A DNA stretch of 64,000 nt. Source: Dendrobates tinctorius (taxonomy: Eukaryota). Of this stretch, positions 37,387 to 60,990 are shown one piece after another. Position 1 is the stretch's first letter, and every line of letters starts with the position of its first letter. Made by a program: the position numbers and the translations under genes. Where the stretch lies: positions 3,224,001 to 3,288,000 of the forward strand of contig NW_027361810.1 in the NCBI RefSeq assembly GCF_039654945.1. Reading direction: 5' to 3'. The notes beneath the pieces are model-generated. The model searched no databases, had not been told where the DNA came from, and was given only the letters and a program-made list of their open reading frames with translations.

Positions 37387-37749
<363 letters not shown>

Positions 37750-39291
37750 TTACACAACCCGACTATGAGAAACCAGCGAGAGGAACGGCACAATGAGACT
37801 CATGATAAGACCCCCGGCTGTGGGGAAAGCCGGTACCCCGGACTGTCCAATGGCCGATTACTGGGACATTACTGTAATGTGAGGAGAGCGCCGGGCTCAG
37901 GTAAGGGCGCGTTCTCACAGCGCAGGAACGTTGCTGTTTATGACATAAAAATAAAAAAACAAAAACTCGCAATCCGACCGCGCCATGTGAATGCGTCCTA
38001 TTTCTATTGTGATCGGGATCTTTACAGATAGAAAACCCCGCAAGAGATAAAATGCACGGGGACGACTAAGGGACCGACGGAGGTTCACACAACAGAGAGC
38101 GGCAGATTTATGGGGTTCTCGGAAAACGGAGAGAAAAAAACCCGAAATAAAGCAGAGTCATTGGAGATCATATGCCTTCCCATGGCGCAATGTTCGGAGG
38201 GTCCTCACCACAATCACGATCTGGAGACTCGTCACCAATCAGCTGATAAAGTCTCCCCTAGTGATCGACAGTAACTGCTCGGCACACCTGGTGTACGCTC
38301 TGTTTCCCTGCAGTGCCCCCGCAGGGATAATGAGGCATTACACCATTCTCCATCATATCAATGGTTTGTCTGGGAAAGCAGGAAACGAAAAGTCCTCCAG
38401 AGAAAGATGGACGTCATCATTAGTCTCCACTCAACCCAAGAGGAAGTGCTCAATACTGGAAACCATCGATTAACACAGAAATCCTAGAAGGAATTGTCCC
38501 CCATTCTATAACTTACTAATAACTGGGGGTGCGGCCAGGAATCCCAAGAACAAGGCTCAGCAGAACGGAGGTACGCATGCTTCACCTCGGCTTCCTTCCC
38601 GGTCTATGAGAGTGCTGGGGAAAGCCGAGTACAGCACCCCACAGTGGAGTATGCACACCTCCGCTCCATTCATTGTCTATGGGACTAATGGAGATAGGAA
38701 GCCAAGAGCACAAACCTCTGATAACACAGGATGAGAGCAACGGGCCCCATCGCCCTACAGCCTGGCCGACCACCCAGTCACCAGGTGCACACGGGTTAAT
38801 GCTCCATCCATGGCGAGCCTCGACGAATTCCACACGGACCATCAGAAATTCTTCAGACGCACATTCCCAGAGAAGCAATTCTTGTATCTGTGGCAACGTG
38901 TGATGTCTAAATTGCTTAATCCCATTACACCCCCTCCTCTGCAAAAGGAAAATAGCAGCTGCAGAATCTCTGATATCTGAACATCTCACCCCAGAGAGGA
39001 GAACATTCAGATAAAAGATCGGAGACCCCCCGAGGGGAAGAAACACCACATCCCCCCCATGTGTCATATTATAAACCCCTCATAGAATTCTCAAATTCTG
39101 ACCTCGTTTCTCTAAAATATCAGAAGAAACAATTGGGAAACCAAGAAGACGGAAGATGACGCATCTCAGAGAAAGGTGAAGCTGCAAAACCTGTGGTCAA
39201 TCCAACAAGTAACGTCATAATACAGGAGCAGCAATGAGCCGATATAGCGAGAGCGTGAAACGCCCCAGGCACGGGGCAGACATCCACGGAC

Positions 39292-40277
39292 CAGTAGTTA
39301 TATTCCTGTACATAGGAGCAGTATTATAGTAGTAATATTCTTGTACATAGGGGGCAGTATTATAGTAGTTATATTCCTGTACATAGGGGGCAGTATTACA
39401 GTAGCTATATTCTTGTACATAGGGGCAGTATTATAGTATATTCTTGTACATGGGGGCAGTATTATAGTAGTTATATTCTTGTATACAGCGGCAGTATTAT
39501 GTACAAGAATATAACTACTATAATACTGCTCCTATGTACAAGAATATAACTACTATAGGAGCAGTATTATAGTAGTTATATTCTTGTATATAGGGGCAGT
39601 ATTACAGTAGTTATATTCTTGTACATAGAGGCAGTATTATAGTAGTTATATTCTTGTACATAGAGGCAGTATTATAGTAGTTATATTCTTGTACATAGAG
39701 GCAGTATTATAGTAGTTATATTCTTGTACATAGAGGCAGTATTATAGTAGTTATATTCTTGTATATAGGAGCAGTATTATAGTAGTTATATTCTTGTACA
39801 TAGAGGCAGTATTATAGTAGTTATATTCTTGTACATAGAGGCAGTATTATAGTAGTTATATTCTTGTACATAGAGGCAGTATTATAGTAGTTATATTCTT
39901 GTACATAGAGGCAGTATTATAGTAGTTATATTCTTGTACATAGAGGCAGTATTATAGTAGTTATATTCTTGTATATAGGAGCAGTATTATAGTAGTTATA
40001 TTCTTGTACATAGAGGCAGTATTATAGTAGTTATATTCTTGTACATGGGGGGCAGTATTATAGTAGTTATATTCTTGTACATAGAGGCAGTATTATAGTA
40101 GTTATATTCTTGTACACAGGGAGCAGTATTATAGTAGTTATATTCTTGTATATAGGAGCAGTATTATAGTAGTTATATTCTTGTACATAGGAGCAGTATT
40201 ATAGTAGTTATATTCTTGTACACAGGGAGCAGTATTATAGTAGTTATATTCTTGTATATAGGAGCAGTATTATAGTA
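39292..40277 (-). repeat. 35-bp satellite (family B), reverse orientation, in MRAS intron 1
   Basis: GCAGTATTATAGTAGTTATATTCTTGTACATAG repeats. Confidence 0.95.
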
Positions 40278-40458
40278 CTAAAGTGCTTTCTTTGAAAGTT
40301 TTATGGAGAATCTGGTGTAGGAATCCTAGGGTACACGTTATGATATTTTACGCCCCAAGCTGTTCGTATCCAGGTACTGTACAGAATGCTCCTGCATTTT
40401 CCTGATGTATGGATCGGTGTCTCCATCCCGTTGCTTCCATGCTCCACTCTCTATTTTA

Positions 40459-40649
40459 GGGCTCACACTCACTTGAGAGAAACTCAGATAAGTCTCCCAC
40501 CTCAATACCCGGCACTGCCGACAGCACTCAGGACCAGAACATTCAGCTGCATAGAAATACATGGAGCTGAACGCTCCAATCCGAGTGCCGGTGGCAGTGC
40601 CGGGTATTGAGACGCGAGAATCATCTGAGTTTCTCTCGAGTATGAGCCC
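40459..40649. mobile_element. Small palindromic MITE (Harbinger-like)
   Basis: TTA|GGGCTCA ... TGAGCCC|TTA; internal inverted arms CTCAATACCCGGCACTGCC / GGCAGTGCCGGGTATTGAG. Confidence 0.7.
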
Positions 40650-42210
40650 TTACAGTGGCGCTTTATTCCGCTCAGCAACTGTCAGCATGAAATGGCCTAA
40701 TTCACTTCTGATTCATGATTTAAGAACGCAATAGCTAAAAAGCTGAAATGTGAGTGAACGATACTGGAGGATCAGGCGGGGAAGGAGGAAGGAAAATGAA
40801 AACTATGAATTGTTAATGAACTGTTTACACCACCTCCTCCATCCATTAACCACCGATACTGCCGATAGAGTCTCACTCCAATATTTCATATTAATGTTAC
40901 TGGAGATTGACCTCAAACTGACAGAAACCACAGCCAGGTCTACCCTTATATGCCCCATAACATACATTGGAATAACAAAGTGGCTGTGAAGAGGTGTGAA
41001 ACAGACATTGCTGTGCAGCCATGACATCCTGTATTATACCCCAGAGCTGCACTCATTATTCTGCTTGATACTTGTGAACATGCACTGGGTGGGGTTTTTT
41101 TTTTTTTTTTTTGAAAGTTTAATCTAGCATTTTTCTTGCCATTTGTACCTGTTTTTTTTTTGCACCTCTCCCACAGTCACTCTCCTCTCAGCAATCTGTC
41201 TCCTTCACTCGAGCCCTCGATTCTCTCAATCCTGATATTCGGTTCACAGAGACGTGGCACAGATCTGAACGCTTCTTTCCAGCCGCCTAAGATCCTTTCT
41301 ACATTCAACTGGCACAAATGTTAATTAGATCTCTGAGCACTGGATGTTCTGATGGATCGTGGAAGAGAATGGCGCTAATTGCTGTCTGTTAGCCGAGATA
41401 CGGAACGTTAACCCTCTCCTGGCCTCTAGGAGGCCACATGGCAGCACCGCCTTGTAACCAGCTGGCACCACATTCCGCCACTGCTCAGGTACACAGTATT
41501 CTTCATGTGATACAATGTAGCACGGTGCAGCCATCATTGTAAGCTACAGAGCACAGGTCGCTACCGCTCCAATAATATTCAGAAAGGTCGAAGTTGTGCA
41601 ACTCTCTTTACATTGCATCACGCTTGCTCCAGTCACATCCAGAGCTGCATCACAATTTACCTTTATATGCATTTGAAGATGCGGCTTGTTCTCTGGATGG
41701 AGGATGCTGGGTGGTGAGATATGTCATTTCTCTTCTGACTGTCCATATGAGGTCATACCTTACATTATTATTAAAAGGAGCATTTAAAGGGAATCTGCCA
41801 CTGTCTTTGCGGTCATGGGCCACAGGATGTAGGGGCAAAGACCCTCATTTCAACAATGTGTCACTTATTGGGCTCCTTGCTGCAGTTTTGATAAATCCCT
41901 GTGTTTTCCCGCTGCAGTTCTAGCAATTTTTTTGAATGCGGAGTAATGTATAACCTGCCTCTGATTGACAGCTCTCTTGTACACAGTGCATAGGCAGAAA
42001 GCAACCAGTGTTGGTGGAGGTGTTATACAGAGCTCCAGGGCCGGTTTAGAGAAAGTGGGGCCCCAAATGCTCACATATCTCACATCACACAAACATTTCG
42101 GTTGTATTTAAAGGTGCAGAGTTCAGACTGTTAAACAAGCGTGATTGACAGCATTGAAGTCGTTTGATGCTTGTTCCCACGATTCTTTACACCAGCTGAG
42201 GAAGAATGAT

Positions 42211-42507
42211 CCTGTGTGCACACGCTGCGGATTGTCCTGCGGATTTTGCTATGGACCGCCATATGGACACCTGCGGTGTATCTGCAGTTTTTCCCCTGCG
42301 GTTTGACACCTGTCATGGAGCAGGTGCCAAACCGCAGCGGAATCCGCACAAAGATTTGACATGCCGCAGTTTTGAAACAGCAGCAAATCCGTGCGGAAAA
42401 TTCCGCACCGTCTGCACTGCGGTTTTTAATTACCGTTGATTTTAATGATCCTGTACACCGCACACAGGACCAAAACCGCTGCAGATCCGCAGCGTGTGTA
42501 CACACCC
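42211..42507. mobile_element. Harbinger-type MITE (GTGCACACGCTGCGG family), degenerate
   Basis: TGTGTGCACACGCTGCGGAT ... ATCCGCAGCGTGTGTACACA. Confidence 0.7.
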
Positions 42508-42651
42508 TGACGGGCACAGTCCTTGATACAGTATAATACAGATCCCATGTAGTATATACAGGTGCATGCCACAGACTTAGAATATCATCAAAAAGTTATT
42601 TATTTCAGTTCAATACAAAAAGTGAATCTCATATTCCATTATTACATAGAG

Positions 42652-43830
42652 TGTCACGTACCGGCTTCTCAACACGCGAATTGGGGTTGCACCTGCAAGG
42701 GTTAATCCATCTCCTCTCACTCGGTGCAGCATTCAACCTGTGTTCTATGCTGCAATTAGAGCATAAATCACACCCCGACACAGACCACACACCTTGGTCA
42801 CACACGCTGCCACCACTCACCGAACACACGGGCGATGAGTACCGGAGATGATACTACTACTATGTGCCAGTCACCAGGAGCGCACACTCTAAGGCTATGG
42901 ATTCTTTAGAGCATACAAGGTTCAAACCTATTAAAGTTTTAAGCTTTAATAGAAAAGGTACAGTGCTTACAATAAAAAGATATTAAAAAAAAAAAATGGA
43001 ACTAAAAAGTGACATTCAAATATGCCAAACAGTGATAAAATTAAAGGGAGAAACTTACAGAAATGTCTAAACTTTGCAGTCTGGCATTCTGCTCCCTGGG
43101 GGGGGGGATAATTATGGAATGGCTCACACCAGCTTGGCTGTCCCTAATTTATAGATTTAATCTGGAGATCAGATTTCTAGACCGGCCTCTCATGTTAATA
43201 TTCCAATTGCTGATTTGTGACTGGATCATGGCGACTCGACCAATGAATAAATTATTTTTCTCTGAATTCTGTTTGTATAACTTTTCTTTCTCATAGTAAA
43301 TACAGTGTCAGGCTGTGTGCACACGCTGCGGATTAGGTGCGGATTCATCCGCGCGGATTTTGTAAAATCCGCAGGTGAAACCGCAGGTCAAAATACCTGC
43401 AGTTTTACCTGCGGATTGCTCTGCGGTTTTTCCATCTCCTCAATGGAGGAGATGGCAAACCGCAGCAGAATCCGCACAAAGAATTGACATGTCAATTCTT
43501 TCTGCGGATTGAAAACCGCAGATAATCCGTGCGGAAAATTCCACACCGTCTGCACTGTGGTTTTTGATTCCCATAGGGAATCATTGTACTGTACACCGCA
43601 GCAAAATCCGCAGCGTGTGCACACAGCCTCAGGCTGCATTTTGGCATCTCACTGCAGAGGCACCAGAAGTTGTGAAATGTCCCCAATTCTGTGTGCTCTT
43701 AGGAAGGCCCCCCTGGGGTTGAGACCTTGAAAACTGTTTTTTCTGAGTATAACACAGGTCAAGACCTTTGTGAAGGGCTGCAGCCTAGAACAGATGCCAA
43801 TTTAATACTGGTCATACATATTTCACTACA
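42652..43830. mobile_element. Probable solo LTR inserted in the left Tc1 TIR
   Basis: TG...CA termini; 5-bp TSD TAGAG/TAGCG; removing it restores TAGAGTCATTAC as seen in the right TIR. Confidence 0.65.
43311..43628. mobile_element. Harbinger-type MITE inside the solo LTR
   Basis: TCA|GGCTGTGTGCACACGCTGCGGATT ... AATCCGCAGCGTGTGCACACAGCC|TCA. Confidence 0.88.
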
Positions 43831-46800
43831 TAGCGTCATTACAGAGTGATCTATGTCACGTGTTTATTTCTGTTAATGTTGATGATTATGGCTTACAGCC
43901 AATGAGAACCCAAAAGTCATTATCTCAGTAAATTAGAATATTTCATAACACCAGCTTAAAAAATTATTTTACAATCCGAAATGTTGGCCTACTGAAGTGT
44001 ATGACCTACACCAGCAGATGACATGGCTCCCCAAACCATCACTGATGGTGGAGACTTCACACTAGACCTGCAGCAGCTTGGATTGTGGCCTCCACTCTTC
44101 CTCCAGACTCTGGGACCGCGATTTCCAAGGTCTAGTGTGAAGTCTCCACCATCAGTGATGGTTTGGGGAGCCATGTCATCTGCTGGTGGAGGTCCACTGT
44201 GTTTTATCAAGACCAAAGTCAGAGCAGCCGTCTACCAGGACATTTTAGAGCACTTCATGCTTCCCTCTGCCGACAAGCTTTATGGAGATGGAAAGGTCAT
44301 TCTCCAGCAGGACTTGGCCCCTGTCCACACGGCCAAAAGTACCAATACCTGGTGTACACACAACAGTATCACTGGGCTTGATTGGCAGCAAACTCGCCTG
44401 ACCTTAACCTCATAGAGAATATATGGAGTATTGTCAGGAGGAAGATGAGAGACACCAGACCCAACAATGCAGACGAGCTGAAGGCTGCAATCAAAGCAAC
44501 CTGGGCTTCCATAACCCCTCAGCAGTGCCACAGGCTGATCGCCTCCATGCCACACCGCATTGATGCAGGAATTGATGTAAAAAGGAGCCCGACCAAGTAT
44601 TGAGGGCATTTACTGAACAGACATTTCAGTAGGACAACATTTCAGATTTTAAAATCATTTTTCATGCTGGTGTTATAAAGTATTCTAATTTACTGAGATA
44701 ATGACTTTTGGTTTTCATTGGCTGTAAGCCATAATAATCAACATTAACAGAAATAAACCCGTGAAATAGATCACTCTGTGTGTAATGACTCTACAGAATA
44801 GAGGAGAGTCACTTTTTGTATAAAAAACTGAAATAAATTCACTTTTTGATGATATTCTTATTTTGTGAGAAGCACCTGTATAGTATAATGCACTCCCCAT
44901 GGTCCTTGATAGAGTATAATGCAGCCCCCGTCAGGGCACACTGCAGCCACACACACACATAGTATAATGCAGCCCCCGCATTCATTCACACACACTATAC
45001 TCACCTCTCCTCCTTGTTTCCCGTACTGCTCCAGGCTCTGCTCCGGTCTCATTGGCTCCACTGCTGGCACACAATGAAGTGACGTCATCACGCAACGGCT
45101 GAGTCAGAGGCAGAGGGGGAGTGATGGGTGAGGGAGTGTCATGTGACGCTTTCAACTGTATTGGCGTCTAGGACGCTGATAAGTTGAACGAGCGAATGGG
45201 GGGGGGGGGGTTGGAGCTCCTCTAACTGGCCCCATAGCGGCTGCGTGGTGTTGTGCTATTAGCGCACACCACTGGCTCAGCTGGGGGTCCCTCGAGGAGC
45301 GGACACCTGGTCTGCCTGCCCCCAACACTGGCCCTGCAGAGCTCATATGTCAGCAGGTGTACTAGTCCTTTAGTAATAGTCTCCTTCTGATAGAACTGCA
45401 GCAAGCGGCCAAGTAAACGACACATTGCTGGAATCAGGGTCTCCGTCTCTACATTATGCTGCTCTCAGATCGGGGAGCAAAAACCTGGTGACAGATTCCC
45501 TTTAAATCCCAGCACAAGCTACGCAGGATCCCATACATCTATGGGGCACATTTGGACACGTGGCTCCCGGGCCGTTTCGTGGGCGGTTGTGCGGTTTACA
45601 CGGGCTTTGGACTCGGACACTGGACCTGTTGTCAGATAAAATTATTCCGGTTTATGAGACAGAACAGATTCCTGATTACCAGTGGTCTGCAGAGCTGTAG
45701 AATGAACCTGTGAATGCCGATGTAAAGCGACTTATGATTCCACATTCCCTGCAGATCCATAAGACCTGGAGCCCCGATACCTCAGAGCTACACCTCTATA
45801 TAGAAGCTGTAACTGGCGCATGCCAGCGCCGCGTCGGGGTAACGAGCAGCGCCATTCACCAGAGCAGCTAATAACTAAAAATCTGCTGTGCGAAGCCACC
45901 GAGCGTCATCGTGTCTCCGGTAATGAATCACAAGAGCCGAGCTGAGACCTCACTCGCTATGAGACACGTCCGGAGCCATCTGCCCCGCACCAAGAATCGC
46001 CCTGCGGAATTACTGAAGAGTCCTAACCCCAGGCCACATCTGCACCGCTGATCAGACAGACGGCACCGCTGGCAAGGGGCAGAGCGCTGTTCAGCCGCCC
46101 GGCGGTCCAGGCGCTCGGCTGGATTTGCATCCGTGGTTTATGCACACAGGAAATGTCATGAGTGGATGCAGAAGTTCACTGTGGAGAGTGAAGGGTTAAC
46201 AGTGCAAGGGGTTATTACTGGGTGGGCAACATATTCCCCATTAACATGATAAGTGATCCCCAGAAATCTGCAGGTTAAGAGACTGCCGGGACCCCCACTG
46301 ATCGCGGGAACAGACCTCTGAAATGCACTGGTAGAATGGAGCAGTGGCCGCATATGTGCACCAAGTCTATGGGGCGGGGGAGCATGTGGGGTCCCAGGAA
46401 TCAGCAATTTATTGCCTATTCGGTGGCCTCTTGGCAATAACCCTTTGTAGATGGTCTACTCTAGTGGTCTCCAACCTGCGGCCTTCCAGCTGTTGAGAAA
46501 CTACAACCCCCAGCATGCTCCAAGATCTTGAATTCCAGAGTAACTCATTAACAGATCTTGGGTGAGAACCAAAAAACGCTGCTCTCTCCGGCTGAAATTC
46601 ATAAACCACACAACTGATCGTTACAATCTTCCGCTGTGTCAGTCTCTACTGTTGTACAAGAATTCTATTCAGGAACAAGGAGGCTCAGGATGAGCAGAAT
46701 CCACCCATATAGTTCATAGAAACAGGAATATGAAAAAAAAAAAATTCACATAAACCCAGAGATTGCTATGTAAGGAATGACGAGGATATGCCGGCAGCGC

Positions 46801-46930
46801 CAACTGTCAGGTCCCCGCCCAGCACTGTAGTCCGGCCTAGAAGGGGCTAAATATAGCGGCTCCGTAATAAAAAGATGAAAGGTATTCACTAAAAATAATG
46901 GCGTCTGCCGAATGCAGGACAAAGAATATA

Positions 46931-47790
46931 CTGTACTGATATAACCCCCAGACATTACACCATATGTGACTGATATCAGCCCCTCTTATAACGCTCCAGT
47001 ACTGATATAACCCCCAGACATTACACCATATGTGACTGATATCAGCCCCTCTTATAACGCTCCAGTACTGATATAACCCCCAGACATTACACCATATGTG
47101 ACTGATATCAGCCCCTCTTATAACACTCCAGTACTGATATAACCTCCAGACATTACACCATATGTGACTGATATCAGCCTCTTATAACGCTCCAGTACTG
47201 ATATAACCTCCAGACATTACACCATATGTGATTGATATCAGCCCCTCTTATAACGCTCCAGTACTGATATAACCTCCAGACATTACACCATATGTGATTG
47301 ATATCAGCCCCTCTTATAACACTCCAGTACTGATATAACCTCCAGACATTACACCATATGTGACTGATATCAGCCTCTTATAACGCTCCAGTACTGATAT
47401 AACCTCCAGACATTACACCATATGTGACTGATATCAGCCTCTCTTATAACGCTCCAGTGCTGATATAACCCCCAGACATTACACCATATGTGACTGATAT
47501 CAGCCCCTCTTATAACGCTCCAGTACTGATATAACCTCCAGACATTACACCATATGTGACTGATATCAGCCTCTCTTATAACGCTCCAGTGCTGATATAA
47601 CCCCCAGACATTACACCATATGTGACTGATATCAGCCCCTCTTATAACGCTCCAGTACTGATATAACCTCCAGACATTACACCATATGTGACTGATATCA
47701 GCCCCTCTTATAACGCTCCAGTGCTGATATAACCCCCAGACATTACACCATATGTGACTGATATCAGCCCCTCTTATAACGCTCCAGTAC
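46931..47790. repeat. 66-bp minisatellite, about 13 copies
   Basis: Unit AGTACTGATATAACCCCCAGACATTACACCATATGTGACTGATATCAGCCCCTCTTATAACGCTCC. Confidence 0.93.
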
Positions 47791-48555
47791 TATTAGGGGC
47801 TTCTTCTATGTTGTGGAGCAGGAGGTTCCTCCGATGTTATGCACTATATTGATTATTCGGGGGGGGGATCTGCCGTTGGTTTTGGCCGCCATCTTGCACC
47901 TCACAATTCTATCCTGTCCAAGGAAGAAGACCAGGAACCCCCCTTGTGTGCTAATGATGGTATCACCATGGAGACCCCGATCACCGCTCCCGCATCCAGA
48001 TCGTACTGAACATTACTGTGAAAACAGAAAAAAAAATAATTTGATGGCGAGGAGCAGAAGAGGAGGATGGGGGAGATGGTGGTGGAGGACGATGCTCCTC
48101 TCCCTCCATCCCACATTGTCTACAGTAGTGGATACACAGTAACCACTGACCGGGGGGGGGGGGGGGGGCAGTCCACAAGCACAGACCCTGATGGATTCTG
48201 ACTTTAATGGGGACCAGTGTTCTGGTATTTTTTCAGGAGGAATCACACCGACACATTGTAGCAAAGGATCAGCTCAGGAGGAGGAGATCTGTGCATCCAT
48301 TACTCACATGTATTGTAACGAACCTTCAGCTGTCAGATTAGGTCAACTATCAACCTCCTCATTCACAGACCACAAGCGGAGTGATGTGAAGTATACTAGA
48401 GAGCTGCAGAGGTCGTTTTACAATTCAGATTTATTCTGGAGTCTGAACTGTATTATAAGGAAATTCAGGCACCAAAGTGGTAAATCAGTTTGGAAGAGTC
48501 AGGTCTCATTCAGACAGAAGGAATTTTTCTTGTACACAAAAAACAATTTAAGCGA

Positions 48556-48710
48556 CAGCAGCGTCCCGCCGTCAGCAGCAGCGTCCCGCCGTCAGCAGCA
48601 GCGTCCCGCCGTCAGCAGCAGCGTCCCGCCGTCAGCAGCAGCGTCCCGCCGTCAGCAGCAGCGTCCCGCCGTCAGCAGCAGCGTCCCGCCGTCAGCAGCA
48701 GCGTCGTCAG
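48556..48710. repeat. 20-bp CpG-rich minisatellite
   Basis: CAGCAGCGTCCCGCCGTCAG, about 7.5 copies. Confidence 0.92.
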
Positions 48711-49439
48711 TTTTTACTACTTTCTTTTATGCAAATAAAAGCCCACCCCAAATTACTGGAGAGCAATACAGACGGCAGCCCCCGCTGAGCTGAAGGTGTG
48801 GCTACCAGGAGAAAATGTCCTTTATTCCTTCCAGGAGTCACCGGCCTTCAGCCATACTGTGTGCACAGAGCGGCTACAGAAATGGCGCAGTGTCCAGTGA
48901 CTGGCAGCAGCACAGGCAGTTTGATTGACAGATGACGCTGCAATGTATCTGTGCACAGCGACGGGTCAAAGTGACGGGCGTGCCGACAGCTGCGCGTGTA
49001 GACAGAATCGGCTACCTACCGCGTCACCAAGGCTGAAAGCTGGCGGCTGCAGGTCGGAAAATAAAGTTCATTTCCTCCCAGGAGCCACACGTTCAGTACA
49101 GCGGCTGGACGGCTTAGTAACGCTGCTAGCCTGCAGACTAATAGCAGAAACCAGGTTTACACAATGCATTTGGGATACCTTGTGTGATTTTCCAAATATG
49201 TGGACAGAATTTAAGCAATTTTACATTGTTTACAGAAAATGTGGCAAAAAACAAAGATGCATTGTGTCAACTCGGCTTTTTTCTGTTTATACCTGCAATA
49301 TATTGTGTGCGGACAGCAGCCGGTGTGATCAGATGCTGCATGGAGCGCAATTACTTAATAAGACCATTATTGTGATCGATGTCATCTCCTCCTATCAGAA
49401 GTCATAACAGAGGAGGCAACAGGAATCTCACCGGCATTA

Positions 49440-49744
49440 GGCTGTGTGCACACGCTGCGGATTAGGTGCGGATTCATCCGCGCGGATTTTGTAAAATCCC
49501 CAGGTCAAAATACCTGCGGTTTTACCTGCGGATTGCTCTGCGGTTTTTCATCTCCTCAATGGAGGAGATGGCAAGCCGCAGGGGAACCCGCAGAAAGAAT
49601 TGACATGTCAATTCTTTCTGCGGACTGAAAACCGCAGATAATCCGCGCGGAAAATTCCGCACCGTCTGCACTGCAGTTTTTGATTCCCATAGGGAATAAT
49701 GGTACTGTACACCGCAGCAAAATCCGCAGCGTGTGCACACAGCC
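49440..49744. mobile_element. Harbinger-type MITE, sister of 43311-43628
   Basis: TTA TSD, same TIRs, closely similar internal sequence. Confidence 0.88.
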
Positions 49745-51428
49745 TTAGACTAGGGGCTGTGTGTGGCGGCCTGGACCCGACGCCCATGCACACAGGTGGA
49801 ATGCTATGAGGGTAACAGTGGGATTTACACTTTAGGATCCAGTGTGGAGACCCATTAGGTCACATGTCAGGGAACTGATCGTAAAGCACAATCGTAATAG
49901 ATCTTCCGAAATCAATCCTTGTTGGAGTGAAAACGATTTACGAACAGGAGCGAGAGGTATGAATATTTCTTAGATTTCATGACACGCTTACACTGCCGGT
50001 GCCATCCCCGTCGTCCCGCACAGCAGCACATGGTGACGCCGAGTCCCTGCGGCCGCGTGACAGGCGCTTCACCTAGCGTCATACGACCTGCGCACGGCTC
50101 GGCAATAAATGGGCCCAGTGTGCAGTGACGTTTTTGTATCAGTTTTGTTCTGAGACAAATTAACAAACTCTTAAATCAATTGTTTTCCCTTTTTTACAGA
50201 ATATGTATCAAAAACAACTAACCTTCAGGTGCGGTTGCCGCCTTACACCCCAATATAGGTTTTTAAGCTTAGTATAAAAGATAACAATGACCCCCATCAT
50301 CCGTTGTAATAGTTTTTGTCATTGTCACTTATCAGATTTAAGGAAAAGCAACGATAGCAAAGTGTAAGGGAATGTTCTCACAAAGCTTTTTTTTTTTTTA
50401 AGCAGCTTTTTTTCTGCAAGGAAGATGCAGGCTACTGTTTGGAAAATGTAAAGTAAACTAATTTTTTTATGCCTTTTTCATCTCATTGGTGAACAGCTGA
50501 AGTGAAAATTCAGAAAGAATTGACTTGCAGCGTGTTTTTCCCTTTAAACTCCACTACAAGTGAATTGTAGAAATCCCATTTACTTTACTCTTCTTGTAAA
50601 ATGTGCAGAAGATAAAAAAAAACGCAACGTGTGAAGAAGCCCTTGGGAGTCCCAGCAGATCTACCCCTCATCAGAGATCTCTGTTATATAGGTAATATGT
50701 GTCTGCAGTCTGAGGTCATCCAGACATTTGTATCCTCTGCTGGGAATTATTGGGAATCTTAATCCATAGACACTCACAGATTATACGGTGAGTGAGAACT
50801 AAATGGGAGTCTCCACAGCAAGCTCTGCGCAGGCACCGAACCAGCAGGGAGAACGCGGAGGCTCAAACCTCCTGTGCGTGAATATTATATACATCTCATT
50901 TATTATGCACATGTCTTAAGATAAAATACAATTCCATCTATATTTTATGGGATTTAGCGATATTTGAGGTTATTGTGGGGGAGATCTACAGAACCGACCT
51001 CCCTGCTGGAGCAGTCACCGTATTGGATAGAGGGTCAGGGTCCGCTTCCTTCAGCCCTCTGCCTCTACATTTAGGGCCTTTCAAGGTCACATGATAACTT
51101 TTTCTTTTTACTTAAAATCCTGTGTTTGGTAATCCAGAGACCTCATTACATGATTTCTGTTTATACAGCACTTAGCATAAGTGACTTTCTAGATTCTGAA
51201 ACAGATTTTTATGAAGATTGCTACAGCAACAAGCGAGATGGCGCAGCATCGTTGCACGGATCAACCTCCTCCGTTGTCGGGATGCGGCTTGAGAACCACT
51301 GCAACAGATCGCAGATGTCTCAGATTTTCTATTGCTGGTCGCAAGTCAAACGCTATCATGCAAGTCACACGCCATCGCAACGCGCCTGTGACGTTTCCGT
51401 TTTATTCACAGCAAAATCAGAGCTCTAA

Positions 51429-52318
51429 GGCCAAGTGCCCACGTTGCAGAAATGCTGCAGAATTGTCCGCAGCTCCGCAACTCCCCGCTGCAGGTAAAAC
51501 GCATGCGGAATTCACATGCGTTTTCCCACAAAACACAAGCTTTTTTTTTTAGCTTGCAGAATGCTAGCGCTTTCCAAGTGATTTGAAGCATCGCTTGGAA
51601 AAGTGATTGACAGGTTGGTCACAGGCATAGCGCTTGACGAGTGTGACCAACCTTTTACTATTGATGCGGCCTATGCAGCATCAATAGTAAGAGATAGAAT
51701 GTTAAAAATAAATAAAAATAATAGGGATATACTTGCCCTCTGTCAGCCCCCGGAGTCCTTCTGGCCCTCAGCAGCGCTGCCAACAAGTTCCGTTCCCAGG
51801 AGTGCTTTGCGCGAAGGACCTTTGATGACGTCGCGGTCACACGACGTCAAAGGTCATTCGCGCAGGAACTTGTTGGCAGCGCTGCTGAGGGCCGGAAGGA
51901 CTCCAGGGGCTGACAGAGGGTGAGTATATCCCAATTTTTTATTTTAACTCTATTTTTACAGGATTATGGTACCCAGGGCCTGGAGGACAGTCTCCTCTCC
52001 TCCGGACCGTGTGTACCATCCGCACATGAAACGCTCACTTTTCGTATGGTGAGCATGGCCACATGCATAAAGTGAGCTTTTCAATGCAATCCTATGGCGG
52101 CAGAATCGCCACGATTCCGCAAAATTGATGGACATGCTGCGGATTTTACCGCGGTGCGATTCCGCAGAGGAAACATCCACAGCATGGGCACAGTAATTGC
52201 GGATTGCGTTGAAAATCAATGTATGTGATGCGTTTTGTTAACATTTTTTAAGAGTTTCCACAGTGGCAAAAATGTGGCGGAAACACTTAAAAAAAAAATG
52301 CAACGTGGGCACACCGCC
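51429..52318. mobile_element. Harbinger-type MITE with central hairpin
   Basis: TAA TSD; GTGCCCACGTTGCA / TGCAACGTGGGCAC; internal palindrome about 51735-51920. Confidence 0.8.
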
Positions 52319-52898
52319 TAATATTGTGCCACAAAAGCAAATCGCAGACAAGTTGCTCAAGTTGTTTTTAAATACAGCCGCTCTCACACAGCTGTCTGGC
52401 AATGTGTCAGCATCTTCATTCAACAACAATTATTATCGAATGGGGCTGAGCTGCAGTACAACAAACCACCAGTTGACAGGTGTGGCGCTGTTTGGGGGAG
52501 GAAAGCAGCAGAGTTTTCCTAACCTTGCTCATTAGAACTCATTGCGTAGCTTGACGTTCTAGATTCCGCATTCAGGATTGTGCACACTCCCGCTTATCTG
52601 GTGCCCTGTATAGCATTTTTTACATTCTAAGATACAGCACTCAGCCCTGTTGGCCAAACAGAAAGTGAAGGAAGAGCCGTCCATTCCTTCCACCCACAAG
52701 AACAGTTTCTGCAGATTCCCCTCACCAAACTTTTTCCTTATTTGACAAAAGTTAATTACTGCAAAAGGTGGGAAAATTAGTCCCCCCATCGCCCCATTTT
52801 TCATTCTGGTGGGGATCCGGTGTCAAAACCAAACAGACCTGACACAACTAACAGAAAACTGTCACGTCACTGGCAGAATGAGTGAGCACATTACAACT

Positions 52899-53247
52899 CT
52901 GGACCAGGCGCCGGCCCCTGGGCTGCAACATGACTGACTGGACCAGGCGCCGGCCCCTGGGCTGCAACATGACTGACTGGACCAGGCGCCGGCCCCTGGG
53001 CTGCAACATGACTGACTGGACCAGGCGCCGGCCCCTGGGCTGCAACATGACTGACTGGACCAGGCGCCGGCCCCTGGGCTGCAACATGACTGACTGGACC
53101 AGGCGCCGGCCCCTGGGCTGCAACATGACTGACTGGACCAGGCGCCGGCCCCTGGGCTGCAACATGACTGACTGGACCAGGCGCCGGCCCCTGGGCTGCA
53201 ACATGACTGACTGGACCAGGCGCCGGCCCCTGGGCTGCAACATGACT
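52899..53247. repeat. 39-bp minisatellite, 9 essentially identical copies
   Basis: CTGGACCAGGCGCCGGCCCCTGGGCTGCAACATGACTGA. Confidence 0.95.
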
Positions 53248-53820
53248 CAGACATCACCCAGCACAATGTGCAGCACTACAAGTCCCAGTCTACCCTGTGA
53301 CAAGAGTTTCTCAGCAGGTGGAGACCTGAACATATATGCAATTCTTATATAAATGGAACAGTCCCATGCAAATTGCTATTATTTCCTAAGGGAGCCACAC
53401 AAACTGATAAAGCATTCTCTAACAGGACGTCGCGGCTCAGACAAGTTAGGACCACAGAGATCAGATCTTCAGTCTTGATGAGAAGTTTTTTCATTTATAT
53501 TAAGCAGAAAAAGAAATAAAGAATGAAAAACAAAAAACTCCCCCAAACAACTCATTATTAACCCTTCCATAGGTCACTCCTCCATGGTCTCCAGAGGATC
53601 ACCCTGGGGGATGTAGTGAGGGTCTGGAGCAGTTAACCCCTGCATGCCTGGGCAGAAGCACTTTTGCTTTTTAGTAATTGACACTTCTCTGCAGACTCTG
53701 GGCCCCCCCCCACCCCAGGAACAGGGAGTATCAGGTCTGGCAGCAGTGACAGGGTTAACCACTGATGAAGAGGAGCTCACTGCAGATTCCTTCCTGCCAT
53801 CCCCTTGTATCTGTGCCCAA

Positions 53821-55170
53821 CTGTGGCCCCTCACTTCATGCTGTGCGGGGTCCCTGTGCCCCCCAGCCCTGTGACATGGGGCTGCTGCCCGGTACTCACC
53901 AGCTGTGGCCCCTCACTTCATGCTGTGCGGGGTCCCTGTGGCCCCAGCTCTGTGACATGGGGCTGCTGCCCGGTACTCACCAGCTGTGGCCCCTCACTTC
54001 ATGCTGTGCGGGGTCCCTGTGGCCCCAGCTCTGTGACATGGGGCTGCTGCCCGGTACTCACCAGCTGCGGCCCCTCACTTCATGCTGTGCGGGGTCCCTG
54101 TGGCCCCCAGCCCTGTGACATGGGGCTGCTGCCCGGTACTCACCAGCTGTGGCCCCTCACTTCATGCTGTGCGGGGTCCCTGTGGCCCCAGCTCTGTGAC
54201 ATGGGGCTGCTGCCCGGTACTCACCAGCTGCGGCCCCTCACTTCATGCTGTGCGGGGTCCCTGTGGCCCCAGCTCTGTGACATGGGGCTGCTGCCCGGTA
54301 CTCACCAGCTGTGGCCCCTCACTTCATGCTGTGCGGGGTCCCTGTGGCCCCAGCTCTGTGACATGGGGCTGCTGCCCGGTACTCACCAGCTGTGGCCCCT
54401 CACTTCATGCTGTGCGGGGTCCCTGTGCCCCCCAGCCCTGTGACATGGGGCTGCTGCCTGGTACTCACCAGCTGTGGCCCCTCACTTCATGCTGTGCGGG
54501 GTCCCTGCGGCCCCAGCTGTGACATGGGGCTGCTGCCCGGTACTCACCAGCTGCGGCCCCTCACTTCATGCTGTGCGGGGTCCCTGTGGCCCCCAGCCCT
54601 GTGACATGGGGCTGCTGCCCGGTACTCACCAGCTGTGGCCCCTCACTTCATGCTGTGCGGGGTCCCTGTGGCCCCAGCTCTGTGACATGGGGCTGCTGCC
54701 CGGTACTCACCAGCTGTGGCCCCTCACTTCATGCTGTGCGGGGTCCCTGTGGCCCCAGCTCTGTGACATGGGGCTGCTGCCCGGTACTCACCAGCTGCGG
54801 CCCCTCACTTCATGCTGTGCGGGGTCCCTGTGGCCCCAGCCCTGTGACATGGGGCTGCTGCCCGGTACTCACCAGCTGTGGCCCCTCACTTCATGCTGTG
54901 CGGGGTCCCTGTGGCCCCAGCTCTGTGACATGGGACTGCTGCCCGGTACTCACCAGCTGCGGCCCCTCACTTCATGCTGTGCGGGGTCCCTGTGGCCCCA
55001 GCTCTGTGACATGGGACTGCTGCCCGGTACTCACCAGCTGCGGCCCCTCACTTCATGCTGTGCGGGGTCCCTGTGGCCCCCAGCCCTGTGACATGGGGCT
55101 GCTGCCCGGTACTCACCAGCTGTGGCCCCTCACTTCATGCTGTGCGGGGTCCCTGTGGCCCCAGCTCTGT
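53821..55170 (-). repeat. 81/82-bp tandem array carrying 16 splice-donor motifs
   Basis: Each unit on - reads ...CAGCATGAAGTGAGGGGCCACAGCTG|GTGAGTACCGGGCAGCAGCCCCATGTCACAG... Confidence 0.93.
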
Positions 55171-55285
55171 GGAGCCCCCACACTCCAGTGCTCGCAGCTC
55201 TGCGCACCGCTCCTTATATCGCCGCCGCCGGGCTGATGATCCTGCCGGGGAGGCGCCGCCGCCTCTGCTCCCTCTCCGCAGCTCT
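55117..55285 (-). promoter_or_regulatory. Putative MRAS promoter and non-coding first exon
   Basis: CpG-rich GGCGGCGGCG tracts; TATAA on - at 55218-55214; first donor CTG|GTGAGT at 55117/55116; exon at 37678 starts with an acceptor, so an upstream exon is required. Confidence 0.55.
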
Positions 55286-56072
55286 TGTCATCAGTTCAGG
55301 CTTTTTCTGCTGTTACATGATACAAAGTTTCATCTTTTTTCCCTGTTGGGATTTGTATCCACTAAGACCATAGAGCCAGACAGTGAAATATCAGCACGCG
55401 GAATGCTCCCCCCCTCCAGGACACAATGGACTCTTCCACAAGCTGAGGGCTCAGAATGTGGCTCTTAAGGTGGACTGGGACTGGCAATGGCTAGAAGCCT
55501 CTGTGAGAGCAGGAGTGCAGAGTCTGGGGGACTGAGGGGCAGTTATTAATTGGGGGGTTGGCAGAGACGTGATGGATTTAGGGCTCTAGTTACTGTGGTG
55601 GAAGAATAAGAGACTTTGCATTTGGACTTCCTTAAGAAAACCACTCCTTACATGGGGCTGGTGAGCTGTCACTCTTTTGAGCTGGCAGTCCTGTTATCAT
55701 GGGGCTGCCCAGTGCCCAGCCCTGTGCTGCCTGCTGGGTGCACATAATAACAATGGCTCCTGGTCATAGTGTGACTCAGATCCTCACCTGATCACCTAGA
55801 GCAGGCATGACAGGGCAGGAAACAGTGTGACAATGCACAGGTCCCCCTCAGCAGATAAAGCAACCCAAGGAAACCGAACCTGAACCCCAATATTAGGAGC
55901 ATCTCCCCTGCACTGAGAGGCACTCACTGCAGAGATTTATCATCATTATTACTTTGATTTTTAGGCACCGCTATGGACACGTTAGGTGGCCCTTCTGAAT
56001 CCTAAGTAATTGTAACATTACAGCTAATATTATCCTTAAGGGGTTGTCAAAAATGAAAAAAAAACTCCTTTA

Positions 56073-57154
56073 AAGGGGTTGTCCGGCCTTTTCACATAAT
56101 CTCAGTACATATCTGGGCTGCAGAATTATGACATTAAGTAATTTACTTTCTGTCACTAGTTTGCACGGTTTTCTAGATATTCTGAACAGAACGTCCAAGG
56201 GGGTTGTTATGGCATTGAAATGAGAACTAGTCGTAACGTCCTACTCTACTCCAAACCTGCCCTCTATAGCAACAACCCCACCCTCCATAGCTACAGGCCC
56301 TCCCCGTCCACATGAACAAGCCCTCCTCACACAGTAACAAATCCTCCCCCTCCAGAAGCCTCACTGCAGAGAGCAGAACCACCCAGCTGCTCCTCCCCCA
56401 GACACACACTGAACAGTGATCTATGGAAAGTGAAACTAGTGAGGAGGGAAAATTGTCCTGTATTCTGGGCCACTCCATGATTACAATACATAACTCATTA
56501 TCAGTAATTCCTTCCCTCACTGTCCCAGGCTGCTGGCAGCAGTGAGAACAGGCTGTGTGATGGCCAGTGATGGGGGTCTGCAGCTTCTAATCTGCACAGG
56601 GGATGGCAGTCACTGATGTAATCTGTTGTGTGACAAAGCCTCTGCTGTGTGAATAAGACAGCTCTGTGTCACTGATGTCTTCACACAGCAGCAGATTTGG
56701 TGCAGTGTATGTGTGAGCACTGTGTCTCTAATGACACAAATACTGATGGGAGGAGCCTATCCCAGAATACAGGACGATTTTCCCTCCTCACTAGTTTCAC
56801 TTTCCATAGATCACTGTTCAGTGTGTGTCTGGGGGAGGAGCAACTGGGTGGTCTGCTCTCTGCACTGAGGCTGCTGGAGGGGGAGGATTTGTTACTGTGT
56901 GATGAGGGCTTCTTCATGTGGACGGGGAGGGCTTGTAGCTATGGGGGGTGGGGTTGTTGCTATAGAGGGCAGGTTTGGAGTAGAGTAGGAGGTTACGACT
57001 AGTTCCCATTTCAACCATAACACACTCCCCCTTGGACGTTCTGTTCAGAATATCTAGAAAACCGTGCAAACTAGCGACAGAAAGTAAATTACTTATTGTC
57101 ATAATTCTGCAGCCCAGAAATGTACTGAGATTATGTGAGAAGCCAACAACCCCT
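56073..57154. mobile_element. T2/Kolobok-type MITE with ~400-bp inverted arms
   Basis: TTAA|AGGGGTTGT ... ACAACCCCT|TTAA; about 56073-56470 mirrors 56760-57154. Confidence 0.88.
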
Positions 57155-57308
57155 TTAAGGCAGCAGTCCTTCTGTGAATTAAGAATTCTATAAAAAAAAA
57201 TCTACTTCCACTTGGAGAGGATGTGCAATAGGGGGTGCAGAGGTAGCGGTGGCATGCAGGCCTTGATGTTTGAGAGTGCATCAAAGAGAGTGCTACAAAA
57301 GCAGACAC

Positions 57309-57490
57309 TAATAATAATAATATTAATAATTTTATTTCTATAGCGCTGACATATTCCGCAGCACTTTACATTTCAGAGGGGATTTGTACAGACAATAGAC
57401 ATTACAGCATAACAATAATCACATACAGTAGATTATAACAAATACCAAGAGGAGTGAGGGCCCTGCTCGCAAGCTTACAGTCTATGAGGA
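57309..57490 (-). mobile_element. Old L2-related 3' end
   Basis: (TAA)n tail, TATAGCGC..GCACTTTAC stem, GAGGGCCCTGCTCGCAAGCTTACA resembling the L2 3' UTR. Confidence 0.55.
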
Positions 57491-57750
57491 AAGAGGTAGA
57501 CACGAAAGGTGGGTGGTAACAGTTGCCCTGATTGTATGGACCAGCCACAGCGTAAGAATCGGGTGTTAATATAATGCTGCATGAGACGGTTATCAGCCAG
57601 AAAATGTAACAGTACAGACACAGAGGGCGATTAAATAAAAAAACCAGTGTGAGAACATGACAGGAGGATGCACTGACTTACCCTAAACTGTACATGAATA
57701 GCAATATACATCACATTACACTAAGAAACGCAGTCTCCAAAGCATGGTAA

Positions 57751-58483: not shown

Positions 58484-59633
58484 AATTATTATTATTATTA
58501 TTATTATTATTATTTATTGTTATAGCGCCATTTATTCCATGGCGCTTTACATGTGAGGGGGGTATACATAAAAACAAGTACAATAATCTTAAACAATACA
58601 AGTCATAACTGGTACAGGAGGAGAGAGGACCCTGCCCGCGAGGGCTCACAATCTTCAAGGGATGGGTGATAATACAGTAGGCGAGGGTAGAGCTGGTCGT
58701 GCAGCGGTTTGGTCGATTGGTGGTTACTGCAGGTTATAGGCTTGTCGGAAGAGGTGGGTCTTCAGGCTCTTTTTGAAGGTTTCGATGGTAGGTGAGAGTC
58801 TGATATGTTGTGGTAGAGAGTTCCAGAGTAGGGGTGATGCGCGAGAGAAATCTTGTATGCGATTGTGGGAAGAGGAGATAAGAGGGGAGTAGAGAAGGAG
58901 ATCTTGTGAGGATCGGAGGTTGCGTGCAGGAAAGTACCGGGAGACGAGGTCACAGATGTATGGAGGAGACAAGTTGTGGATGGCTTTGTATGTCATGGTT
59001 AGGGTTTTGTAATGGAGTCTCTGGGCAATTGGGAGCCAGTGAAGGGATTGACAGAGGGGAGAAGCTGGGGAATAGCGGGGGGACAGGTGGATTAGTCGGG
59101 CAGCAGAGTTTAGAATAGATTGGAGGGGTGCGAGAGTGTTTGAGGGGAGGCCGCAGAGCATGAGGTTGCAGTAGTCAAGGCGAGAGATGATGAGGGCATG
59201 GACTAGGGTTTTTGCAGATTCTTGGGTGAGGAATGAACGGATGCGTGAAATATTTTTGAGTTGAAGTCGGCAGGAAGTGGAAAGGGTTTGGATATGTGGT
59301 TTGAAGGAGAGATCAGCATCAAGGATTACTCCGAGGCAGCGAGCTTGTGGGACTGGGGAGAGTGGGCAGTCATTTACTGTAATTGATAGGTTCATAGGGG
59401 GGGTCACGTGAGATGGGGGAAAGATGATGAATTCTGTTTTGTCCATGTTGAGTTTCAGATATCTAGTGGAGAAGAAGGATGAAATAGTGGACAGACATTG
59501 AGGGATTCTGGTTAGTAGGGAGGTGATATCTGGTCCAGAGATGTAGATCTGTGTGTCATCAGCATAAAGATGATACTGAAAGCCATGAGATTCTATGAGC
59601 TGTCCCAGGCCAAAGGTGTAAATAGAGAACAGC
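58484..59633 (-). mobile_element. L2 LINE 3' fragment, copy 2 (same family as 15128-16872)
   Basis: Open 240-aa C-terminal ORF2 segment ([12 protein letters not shown]); same 3' UTR and (AAT)n tail. Confidence 0.92.
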
Positions 59634-59678: not shown

Positions 59679-60990
59679 CACAGGTCAACGAAAAAAAATT
59701 TTTTTTCTGGTGTCCAAAATATTTTAATGAATTTGGGGTATTTTTGGGGTGCTGATTCTGAATATGTCATCAGTTTTGCCAGATTGGCTCAAGTTTTTGA
59801 GATTTTTGGTATCTTATTTATAGCACTTGTTGGTAAATGCGACGCATCATCTCATTAATTTCTTTGGATTAGTACTTGAACTGAGCAGTTCTCAATATAG
59901 TTTTGTGTTAATTAGTGTTCTAAAAGTTTGTTCATAGCTTGATTTTTGCACTAACTTTATGTTGTTGTCTGTTTTCCAGTGAAAAGCATGAACTCATCAT
60001 GAAGAAGTTGTCTTAACGATCCAGACTCATTCTGTTACATTTGTGGTGAATATACACTGCCAAAACATAGAAGAAACATAACACACTTCGTAAAAAAAGT
60101 GTATTTTGCCTATTTTGGGGTTATGCTTGGGGACCAAGACAAGTTTTGGGCACCACACATAGTGTGCAAAGCATGTATCGAATTATTACGAAAATGGAGC
60201 AAAGGACAAAGAAAAAGCTTCAAATTTGGTGTTCCAATGGTGTGGAGAGAGCCAAAAAATCATCATGATGACTGTTATTTCTGTGCAGTGCAAGTGCAAG
60301 GATTCAATAAGCATAAGAAACGAAAATGGGAGTAACATGGAATCTGCAAGAAGGCCTGTCCCTCATTGTGAAGATGTGCCTGTACCTGTGTTTACCATAA
60401 ATAACAGTCATCATGATGATTTTTTGGCTCTCTCCACACCATTGGAACACCAAATTTGAAGCTTTTTCTTTGTCCTTTGCTCCATTTTCGTAATAATTCG
60501 ATACATGCTTTGCACACTATGTGTGGTGCCCAAAACTTGTCTTGGTCCCCAAGCATAACCCCAAAATAGGCAAAATACACTTTTTTTACGAAGTCTGTTA
60601 TGTTTCTTCTATGTTTTGGCAGTGTGTATTCACCACAAATGTAACAGAATGAGTCTGGATCGTTAAGACAACTTCTTCTTGATGAGTTCATGCTTTTCAC
60701 TGGAAAACAGACAACAACATAAAGTTAGTGCAAAAATCAAGCTATGAACAAACTTTTAGAACACTAATTAACACAAAACTATATTGAGAACTGCTCAGTT
60801 CAAGTACTAATCCAAAGAAATTAATGAGATGATGCGTCGCATTTACCAACAAGTGCTATAAATAAGATACCAAAAATCTCAAAAACTTGAGCCAATCTGG
60901 CAAAACTGATGACATATTCAGAATCAGCACCCCAAAAATACCCTAAATTCGATGAAATATCTTTGGCACCAAAAATGCTGTTGACCAGTG
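59679..60990. mobile_element. Chapaev3-like (CMC) foldback non-autonomous transposon
   Basis: TTA|CACAGGTCAAC ... GTTGACCAGTG|TTA; both arms encode the N-terminus CLNDPDSFCYICGE..LGDQDKFWAPH..C..C..VPMVWREPKNH..DCY. Confidence 0.75.

What the first reader, a model, noticed from the sequence alone, without database searches (positions are those of the whole stretch)
53821..55285. Putative MRAS first-exon/intron junction amplified into a ladder of 16 splice donors
Seen: on the minus strand a CpG-rich tract with TATAA (55218-55214) leads directly into an 81/82-bp array. Each unit holds a near-consensus donor CTG|GTGAGT; I count 16, from 55117 down to about 53900. The MRAS exon at 37678 opens with an acceptor 19 nt before the ATG, so a non-coding exon must lie upstream. 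Inference: this is that exon, and the repeat unit straddles its 5' splice site. A VNTR could then set 5' UTR length in 81-nt steps and the number of U1 sites next to the promoter. U1 density near a TSS is known to affect premature polyadenylation and promoter-proximal transcription, so copy number could act as a splicing or expression rheostat on a Ras gene.
Basis: partly seen in the sequence, partly recalled or inferred. Interest (0 to 1): 0.75.

Follow-up and report, generated by a model that had tools for sequence, protein, structure and literature searches.

The report
Splice-donor minisatellite after MRAS exon 1
The short non-coding first exon of a frog's MRAS gene, together with its splice signal, has been copied 16 times in a row into the following intron. 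Assembled messenger RNA uses only the first copy, so this is a real but ordinary example of a repeat type already known from human genes such as F7.

Summary
An 81-bp x 16.7 tandem array lies at 53817-55171 on the minus strand. It carries 16 exact copies of CTGGTGAGT (0.8 expected by chance). A short CpG-rich tract with a TATAA box precedes it.

In four public runs from two studies, assembled contigs join the sequence ending at 55117 directly to the MRAS coding exon at 37678. Three contigs end at 55178-55180, 34-40 nt below the TATAA. Exon 1 is therefore about 64 nt, and its last 55 nt plus the first 26 nt of intron 1 form the repeat unit.

The functional reading is not supported. Every junction contig uses the first, cap-proximal donor. 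No contig covers the intron part of any unit, so no 81-nt ladder of 5' UTRs is seen. Minor isoforms cannot be excluded from contigs.

This arrangement is a known class, described for human F7, IFI6, CBS, LMNB2 and PDGFA (PMC1557585). This scan has already noted at least nine other cases on other DNA of the same genome, including GALNT16, SURF2, TLN1, ROGDI and HGD. Minisatellites make up 31% of this window. The array is most likely a tolerated by-product of rampant minisatellite formation, kept harmless by most-upstream donor choice.

The parts
55181..55330 (-). Core promoter of MRAS: a short CpG-rich tract with a TATAA box at 55218-55214
   Evidence: Sequence. CpG obs/exp is 0.64-0.85 here against 0-0.3 in the flanks. 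Contig 5' ends lie 34-40 nt below the TATAA. Promoter function is inferred.
55117..55180 (-). MRAS exon 1, non-coding, about 64 nt as seen in RNA contigs. The last 55 nt (55171-55117) are the exon part of the first repeat unit. It holds a 2-codon uORF (ATG AAG TGA).
   Evidence: X1 contig piece 55116-55180, followed by Illumina adapter letters at 55180. X3 and X2 contigs end 8 and 7 letters above the repeat part. uORF read.
55111..55119 (-). Authentic 5' splice site CTG|GTGAGT (exon ends at 55117), the one used in RNA
   Evidence: Loose letters at 55116 in X1 and X4 are, reverse-complemented, the first 30 letters of exon 2 after its initial G.
53817..55171 (-). 81-bp minisatellite, 16.7 copies. 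Each unit is 55 nt of exon-1-like sequence plus 26 nt of intron start.
53894..55037 (-). 15 downstream pseudo-donors, identical in the 9-mer CTGGTGAGT, spaced 79-82 nt apart. They lie inside intron 1 and are unused in assembled RNA.
   Evidence: positions. (no contig on the intron part of the units; no junction from a later donor that can be told apart from the first).
37679..55116 (-). MRAS intron 1, 17,438 nt. It starts with the array and also holds a perfect 39-bp x 8.9 array at 52899-53247.
   Evidence: Junction. Length and PAS-like hexamers (first at 51943). 39-bp array.
37467..37678 (-). MRAS exon 2, the first coding exon. The acceptor AG is at 37680-37679 and the ATG at 37659. The 3' end at 37467 is inferred from the GT and the reading phase.

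Best explanation
This is an intronic minisatellite whose first monomer spans the exon 1/intron 1 boundary of MRAS.

Origin (inferred): an 81-bp segment, made of the last 55 nt of the non-coding first exon plus the first 26 nt of the intron, was duplicated. It then expanded by slippage or unequal exchange to about 16 further copies, which all lie in intron 1.

Splicing (junction shown, mechanism inferred): transcription starts about 35-40 nt below a TATAA box. The spliceosome pairs the first, cap-proximal donor at 55117 with the acceptor at 37678. The 15 identical downstream donors are removed with the 17.4-kb intron. The choice of the most upstream site follows position, not sequence or structure. 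It fits the 5'-to-3' 'oriented scanning' rule shown for F7, and cap-binding-complex help for the cap-proximal site (the latter from my own knowledge).

Function (inferred): the array is most likely a tolerated by-product of the very high minisatellite activity of this genome, not a regulator. It turns over between individuals, which alters the 5' UTR by a few bases.
For: - Array and 16 identical donors.
- Junction: in X1 and X4 the contig leaves the genome at 55116 and continues with AACCGTACTGAGGACAAGATGGCTACCAGC, which is exon 2 from 37677.
- X2 and X3 (another study) show the same junction. Their exon-1 pieces were placed on 54061-54117 and 55034-55090. These two 57-mers are identical, so the placement among units is arbitrary.
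- The X3 contig carries GGGGGCTC, the unique exon-1 letters 55179-55172, directly before that single unit. It therefore uses the first donor of an allele whose first unit is the 82-bp 'B' type.
- Contig 5' ends at 55180 (followed by adapter letters), 55179 and 55178 agree on one start.
- Depth is zero over the intron parts of all units in all four runs.
- Predicted accessibility of donors 1-3 is alike (0.31, 0.34, 0.31). The 9-mer and its downstream context are the same, so only position distinguishes donor 1.
- Class precedent: PMC1557585 describes such minisatellites in F7, IFI6 (6-16), CBS, LMNB2 and PDGF intron 4, with only the most upstream site used in F7, LMNB2 and PDGF.
- Background: 25 arrays cover 31% of the window. 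At least nine other donor arrays are noted in this genome.
Against: - Logan contigs drop rare variants, so low-level use of donors 2, 3 and beyond is not excluded. IFI6 and CBS do use the two nearest pseudo-sites.
- Only four runs from two studies were laid, with unknown tissues and library type not on record.
- 'By-product' rests on abundance and parsimony, not on a test of neutrality.
- No orthologous locus could be compared, so the direction (exon copied into an array, or array captured as an exon end) and the age are unknown.
- Copy-number variation itself was not measured. Only a sequence difference in the first unit was seen.
Confidence: 0.85

Rival explanations
1. Copy number of the donor array tunes MRAS output, either through the number of U1 snRNP sites next to the promoter (telescripting, or 5'ss-stimulated initiation) or by setting 5' UTR length in 81-nt steps.
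For: - 16 strong identical donors (8 of 9 consensus positions) lie within 1.3 kb of the start site.
- The array has no PAS-like hexamer; the first in the intron is at 51943.
- The first unit differs between animals, so the array does turn over.
- Effects of promoter-proximal 5' splice sites on transcription and premature polyadenylation are established in other systems (own knowledge, not tested here).
Against: - No 81-nt ladder appears in assembled RNA; only the first donor is seen in 4 runs.
- The same array type sits at internal exons of many genes of this genome, far from promoters, so proximity to a promoter is not needed to explain it.
- 31% of the window is minisatellite.
- There is no measurement of expression against copy number.
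Confidence: 0.07
2. Leaky pseudo-sites. The first donor dominates, but donors 2-3 (146 and 227 nt from the start) are used at a low level, as in human IFI6 and CBS. This would give longer 5' UTRs that add upstream ATGs and so reduce translation of a minor fraction of transcripts.
For: - PMC1557585 reports constitutive use of the two nearest pseudo-sites in IFI6 and CBS.
- A second-donor isoform would add two uATGs, one opening a 13-codon uORF.
- The donors are identical and equally accessible in the predicted fold.
Against: - No contig with the intron part of a unit was laid in any run.
- In F7, LMNB2 and PDGF the pseudo-sites are silent.
Confidence: 0.2
3. Reverse order of events. A minisatellite was there first, and the MRAS promoter or first exon came to use the donor of its first unit. 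In this case the exon end derives from the repeat rather than the repeat from the exon.
For: - 86% of exon 1 (55 of 64 nt) is repeat sequence.
- Arrays are everywhere in this genome.
- The array is not a whole number of units (16.7), and its far end stops at the donor position.
Against: - The unit was found nowhere else in the window. The scan's index also gave a blank, which counts for little.
- A 5' non-coding exon is needed by the acceptor before the ATG regardless.
- The flanks show no degenerate units; the best local alignments are 17 and 9 nt.
- This is not decidable without orthologues.
Confidence: 0.12
4. The array is a coding or otherwise transcribed repeat. Open frames of up to 222 codons run through it on the plus strand.
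For: 81 = 27 codons, so frames stay open across the units.
Against: - Open frames appear on both strands and in several phases, as in any stop-free 3n repeat.
- There is no RNA contig over the array apart from the exon-1-like pieces attached to MRAS exon 2.
- There is no Rfam family.
Confidence: 0.01

Closest known systems
Human F7 intron 7 37-bp VNTR (Borensztajn et al. 2006, PMC1557585)
   Same: The first monomer spans the exon-intron boundary, the donor is reiterated identically in the intron, and only the most upstream donor is used.
   Different: - F7 has 5-9 copies of 37 bp at an internal coding exon, and only 4 nt of exon in the unit.
- Here there are 16-17 copies of 81 bp at the non-coding first exon, 64 nt from the start site, with 55 nt of exon in the unit.
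- The functionality of the pseudo-sites was shown by mutagenesis in F7, not here.
Human PDGF (A chain) intron 4 and LMNB2 minisatellites (cited in PMC1557585)
   Same: These are long monomers (81 bp x 16-18 copies; 100 bp x 10-15 copies) that repeat the exon/intron junction, and only the authentic donor is used. The size and copy number of the PDGF array happen to match this one.
   Different: They are different genes with internal exons and no sequence relation. The likeness in 81 bp x 16 is coincidence.
Human IFI6 (6-16) intron 2 and CBS intron 13 minisatellites (cited in PMC1557585)
   Same: They are donor-reiterating minisatellites.
   Different: There the two nearest pseudo-sites are used constitutively. 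Here no such isoform is seen in contigs, and minor use is untested.
Other donor minisatellites of this same frog genome noted by this scan (GALNT16, SURF2, TLN1, ROGDI, HGD, EIF1AD, MRPL37, perlecan, and an array 29.5 kb before this window)
   Same: They are the same construction in the same genome. Follow-ups report that only the first donor is used in assembled transcripts.
   Different: Most are at internal, coding exons. This one (and MRPL37, not followed up) is at exon 1. Here the exon is wholly non-coding and next to the promoter.

Membership tests
Minisatellite spanning an exon-intron boundary (F7 IVS7 type) | Tandem array whose first monomer contains the end of an expressed exon and the start of its intron | tested here: met
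   The array begins at 55171, inside the RNA-supported exon 1 (55180-55117), and runs on into intron 1.
Minisatellite spanning an exon-intron boundary (F7 IVS7 type) | The donor sequence is reiterated identically in the following intron | tested here: met
   There are 16 exact CTGGTGAGT sites; 15 lie downstream of the authentic one.
Minisatellite spanning an exon-intron boundary (F7 IVS7 type) | The most upstream donor is the one used; pseudo-sites are silent or nearly so | tested here: met
   Junction contigs of 4 runs. X1 and X4 sit on the first donor. X3 has the unique exon-1 letters directly before a single unit. No contig covers the unit intron parts. This holds at the level of assembled major forms only.
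Minisatellite spanning an exon-intron boundary (F7 IVS7 type) | Variable number of repeats between individuals (VNTR) | tested here: inconclusive
   Exon 1 in the study-P2 animals matches the 82-bp B-type unit, not the reference's first unit. This shows exchange among units. Array length was not measured.
Minisatellite spanning an exon-intron boundary (F7 IVS7 type) | Pseudo-sites are functional when the upstream site is inactivated | not testable with these tools
   This needs minigene mutagenesis.
Promoter-proximal U1 / 5' splice-site control of transcription and premature polyadenylation | 5' splice sites close to the start site | tested here: met
   The donors lie 64 to about 1,280 nt from the contig 5' end.
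Promoter-proximal U1 / 5' splice-site control of transcription and premature polyadenylation | The number of sites changes RNA output or the use of nearby poly(A) signals | not testable with these tools
   There are no expression data by genotype. The first PAS-like hexamer is 3.2 kb into the intron.
M-Ras (the gene the exon belongs to) | The coding exon spliced to this exon encodes the M-Ras N-terminus and G1/switch I | tested here: met
   The 63-aa translation matches M-Ras chains at E = 7.6e-36 over residues 1-63, and other Ras proteins at 1e-17 or weaker.

The most novel reading that the evidence does not exclude
Because this donor array sits 64 nt from the cap of a Ras-family gene, it could act as a copy-number-dependent U1 snRNP landing pad that raises or stabilises promoter-proximal transcription. 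Alternatively, through occasional use of donors 2-3, it could load the 5' UTR with uORFs. Either way, array length would be a heritable quantitative dial on M-Ras dosage in this frog.
Probability: 0.06. Interest if true: 0.6.

Novelty: new member of a known kind. Interest (0 to 1): 0.27.

Why it matters
The value is mainly as annotation. It fixes the MRAS promoter, start site, non-coding exon 1 and the 17.4-kb intron 1 in this genome.

It also adds a first-exon case to a growing list of donor-reiterating minisatellites in one frog genome. Taken together, these arrays are a natural series of experiments on 5' splice-site choice: many identical strong donors, with the most upstream one chosen. 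The first-exon case isolates the cap-proximal situation, where there is no upstream 3' splice site to define the exon.

On its own it does not open a new question, and the proposed rheostat has no support yet.

Tried and rejected
- Use of later donors: the X2 and X3 pieces were placed on units 13 and 1 (54061-54117 and 55034-55090), which at first looked like use of later donors. The two 57-mers are identical, and X3 carries the unique exon-1 letters just upstream, so this is an allele of the first unit.
- RNA structure hiding the later donors: the predicted unpaired probabilities of donors 1-3 are alike.
- Degenerate units in the flanks, which would hint at an older, larger array: only 17-nt and 9-nt local matches were found.
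- The unit elsewhere: there are no copies outside the array in the window. The scan's index was blank.
- Rfam on 52500-57500: no family.
- Coding reading of the array's ORFs: rejected.
- Pfam on two ORFs upstream (58724-59446 and 60392-60700, minus strand): no family.
- Two findings look-ups gave nothing: 'MRAS' and a six-word query.
The junction was read from loose ends exon by exon. A local script read uORFs across the junction.

Full report
**Observation**

On the minus strand, Tandem Repeats Finder reports an 81-bp unit repeated 16.7 times at 53817-55171. Matches are 96%, with a weak three-unit (244-bp) higher order.

The 9-mer CTGGTGAGT occurs 16 times on that strand, with its C at 55119, 55037, 54956 ... 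53902. Shuffles give 0.81 sites on average and at most 4. Cutting the array at each GT gives units of 79-82 bp that fall into a few variant types. The 17th, partial unit ends in CAGTTGGGC and has lost the donor.

The TATAA at 55218-55214 is there. The CpG-rich tract is real but short. CpG observed/expected is 0.64-0.85 in 55100-55399 and 0-0.3 on either side; the array itself is G+C-rich but CpG-poor, at about 0.26.

The downstream exon opens behind an AG at 37680-37679, with 19 nt before the ATG. Its 63-residue translation matches M-Ras chains of the PDB at E = 7.6e-36, while other Ras proteins score 1e-17 or weaker. All parts of the observation are confirmed.

**Is it MRAS exon 1?**

The one run search gave four runs of the same species label, from two studies, all kept as Logan contigs. 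Laid on 53500-56500, each run has one contig that matches the exon-like sequence ending at a donor. Each contig then leaves the genome with the same 30 loose letters. Reverse-complemented, these read AACCGTACTGAGGACAAGATGGCTACCAGC, which is the coding exon from 37677 onward. The shared G makes the aligner stop at 55116, so the junction is CTG|GAACCG, that is 55117 joined to 37678.

These contigs are 462, 1280 and 1548 letters long (the X4 contig is not listed), and the exon-1 piece sits at one end of each. Introns and the array have no depth, so the runs behave as RNA.

The contig 5' ends agree. X1 stops at 55180 and runs into Illumina adapter letters. X3 carries 8 further letters (GGGGGCTC, 55179-55172) and X2 carries 7. 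The RNA therefore starts at or a few bases above 55180, which is 34-40 nt below the TATAA.

Exon 1 is thus about 64 nt and non-coding. Its last 55 nt plus the first 26 nt of intron 1 make up the repeat unit.

**Which donor is used?**

X1 and X4 sit on the first donor. X2 and X3 (the other study) were placed on 54061-54117 and 55034-55090, with one mismatch each. Those two 57-mers are identical, so the placement among units is arbitrary.

In X3 the unique exon-1 letters lie directly before the single unit. This is first-donor use in an allele whose first unit is the 82-bp 'B' type (one more G, and G for A at two sites). It is not use of a later donor.

No contig covers the intron part of any unit in any run. 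The assembled major form therefore always uses the most upstream, cap-proximal donor. Contigs drop rare variants, so minor use of later donors stays open.

The difference in the first unit between animals shows that units are exchanged. It changes the 5' UTR by one base in length and by one or two substitutions.

**Mechanism**

All 16 donors share the 9-mer (8 of 9 consensus positions) and the same downstream context. Predicted accessibility of donors 1-3 in the first 308 nt of pre-mRNA is alike, at 0.31, 0.34 and 0.31. Position is therefore what sets donor 1 apart.

This matches the rule shown by mutagenesis for the F7 intron 7 minisatellite. [quoted passage not shown] For a first exon, the cap-binding complex is known to favour U1 binding at the cap-proximal site. 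That point is my own knowledge and was not tested here.

The 15 pseudo-donors then leave with the 17,438-nt intron. If donor 2 were used, the 5' UTR would gain two upstream ATGs. That would be a cost rather than an obvious benefit.

**Why is it there?**

The window holds 25 minisatellite arrays of period 10 or more, covering 31% of its length. With arrays this dense, some are expected to be seeded across exon-intron junctions. An array that spreads into the intron is harmless as long as the first donor wins.

The scan's notes on this same genome (a poison frog, by those notes) list the same construction at GALNT16, SURF2, TLN1, ROGDI, HGD, EIF1AD, MRPL37 and perlecan, and at an array 29.5 kb before this window. 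The follow-ups report first-donor use. I did not re-test those loci. So the scan has found this kind before on other DNA of this genome.

**Known class**

- F7, 37 bp x 5-9
- IFI6/6-16
- CBS intron 13
- LMNB2, 100 bp x 10-15
- PDGF intron 4, 81 bp x 16-18

In F7, LMNB2 and PDGF only the authentic site is used. In IFI6 and CBS the two nearest pseudo-sites are used as well.

The present array meets the defining features that could be tested. Length polymorphism and pseudo-site competence could not be tested. What is particular here is the position: a wholly non-coding first exon, 64 nt from the start site of a Ras-family gene.

**The rheostat idea**

Nothing seen here supports steps of 81 nt in the 5' UTR. 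The U1-density idea is untested. It is not excluded, but it is not needed either, since the same arrays occur at internal exons far from promoters. I give it about 6-7%.

**Limits**

- Only contigs were available, from four runs, with tissue and library type not on record.
- No orthologous frog sequence could be reached with these tools, so the age and the order of events (exon copied into an array, or array captured by the exon) are open.

Noticed in passing
window 52899-53247: A 39-bp x 8.9 array with 100% identical copies lies inside MRAS intron 1, 570 bp below the 81-bp array. It looks like a very young expansion or recent homogenisation.
   Followed up: no
window 56088-57142: A large inverted repeat has arms 56088-56469 and 56761-57142 that are 95-98% complementary, with a 291-nt loop, about 0.9 kb upstream of the MRAS start. 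In all four runs its left arm is covered by many short RNA contigs with mismatches and differing loose ends (summed depth up to about 630). It looks like a multi-copy, expressed foldback element. No Rfam family matches.
   Followed up: partly
window 55190-55349: One X1 contig (160 nt, depth 6.6, against 252 for the exon-1 contig) lies upstream of the TATA box. It could be weak upstream or divergent transcription, or DNA carry-over. Contigs give no strand.
   Followed up: no
whole window: 25 minisatellite arrays (period 10 or more) cover 31% of the 64 kb. Two are dispersed families: a 57-bp unit (1-276, 10264-10831, 14614-15130, 16873-21569) and a 35-bp unit (26338-26908, 28570-29107, 29728-30139, and inverted at 39293-40277 in MRAS intron 1).
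   Followed up: partly
window 58724-59446 (-) and 60392-60700 (-): Two ORFs of 240 and 102 aa lie upstream of MRAS. They look like remnants of mobile-element proteins (own impression), but neither matches any Pfam family.
   Followed up: partly
window 61455-64000: A 48-bp x 53 array runs off the end of the window. Long open frames on both strands are a by-product of the 3n period.
   Followed up: no
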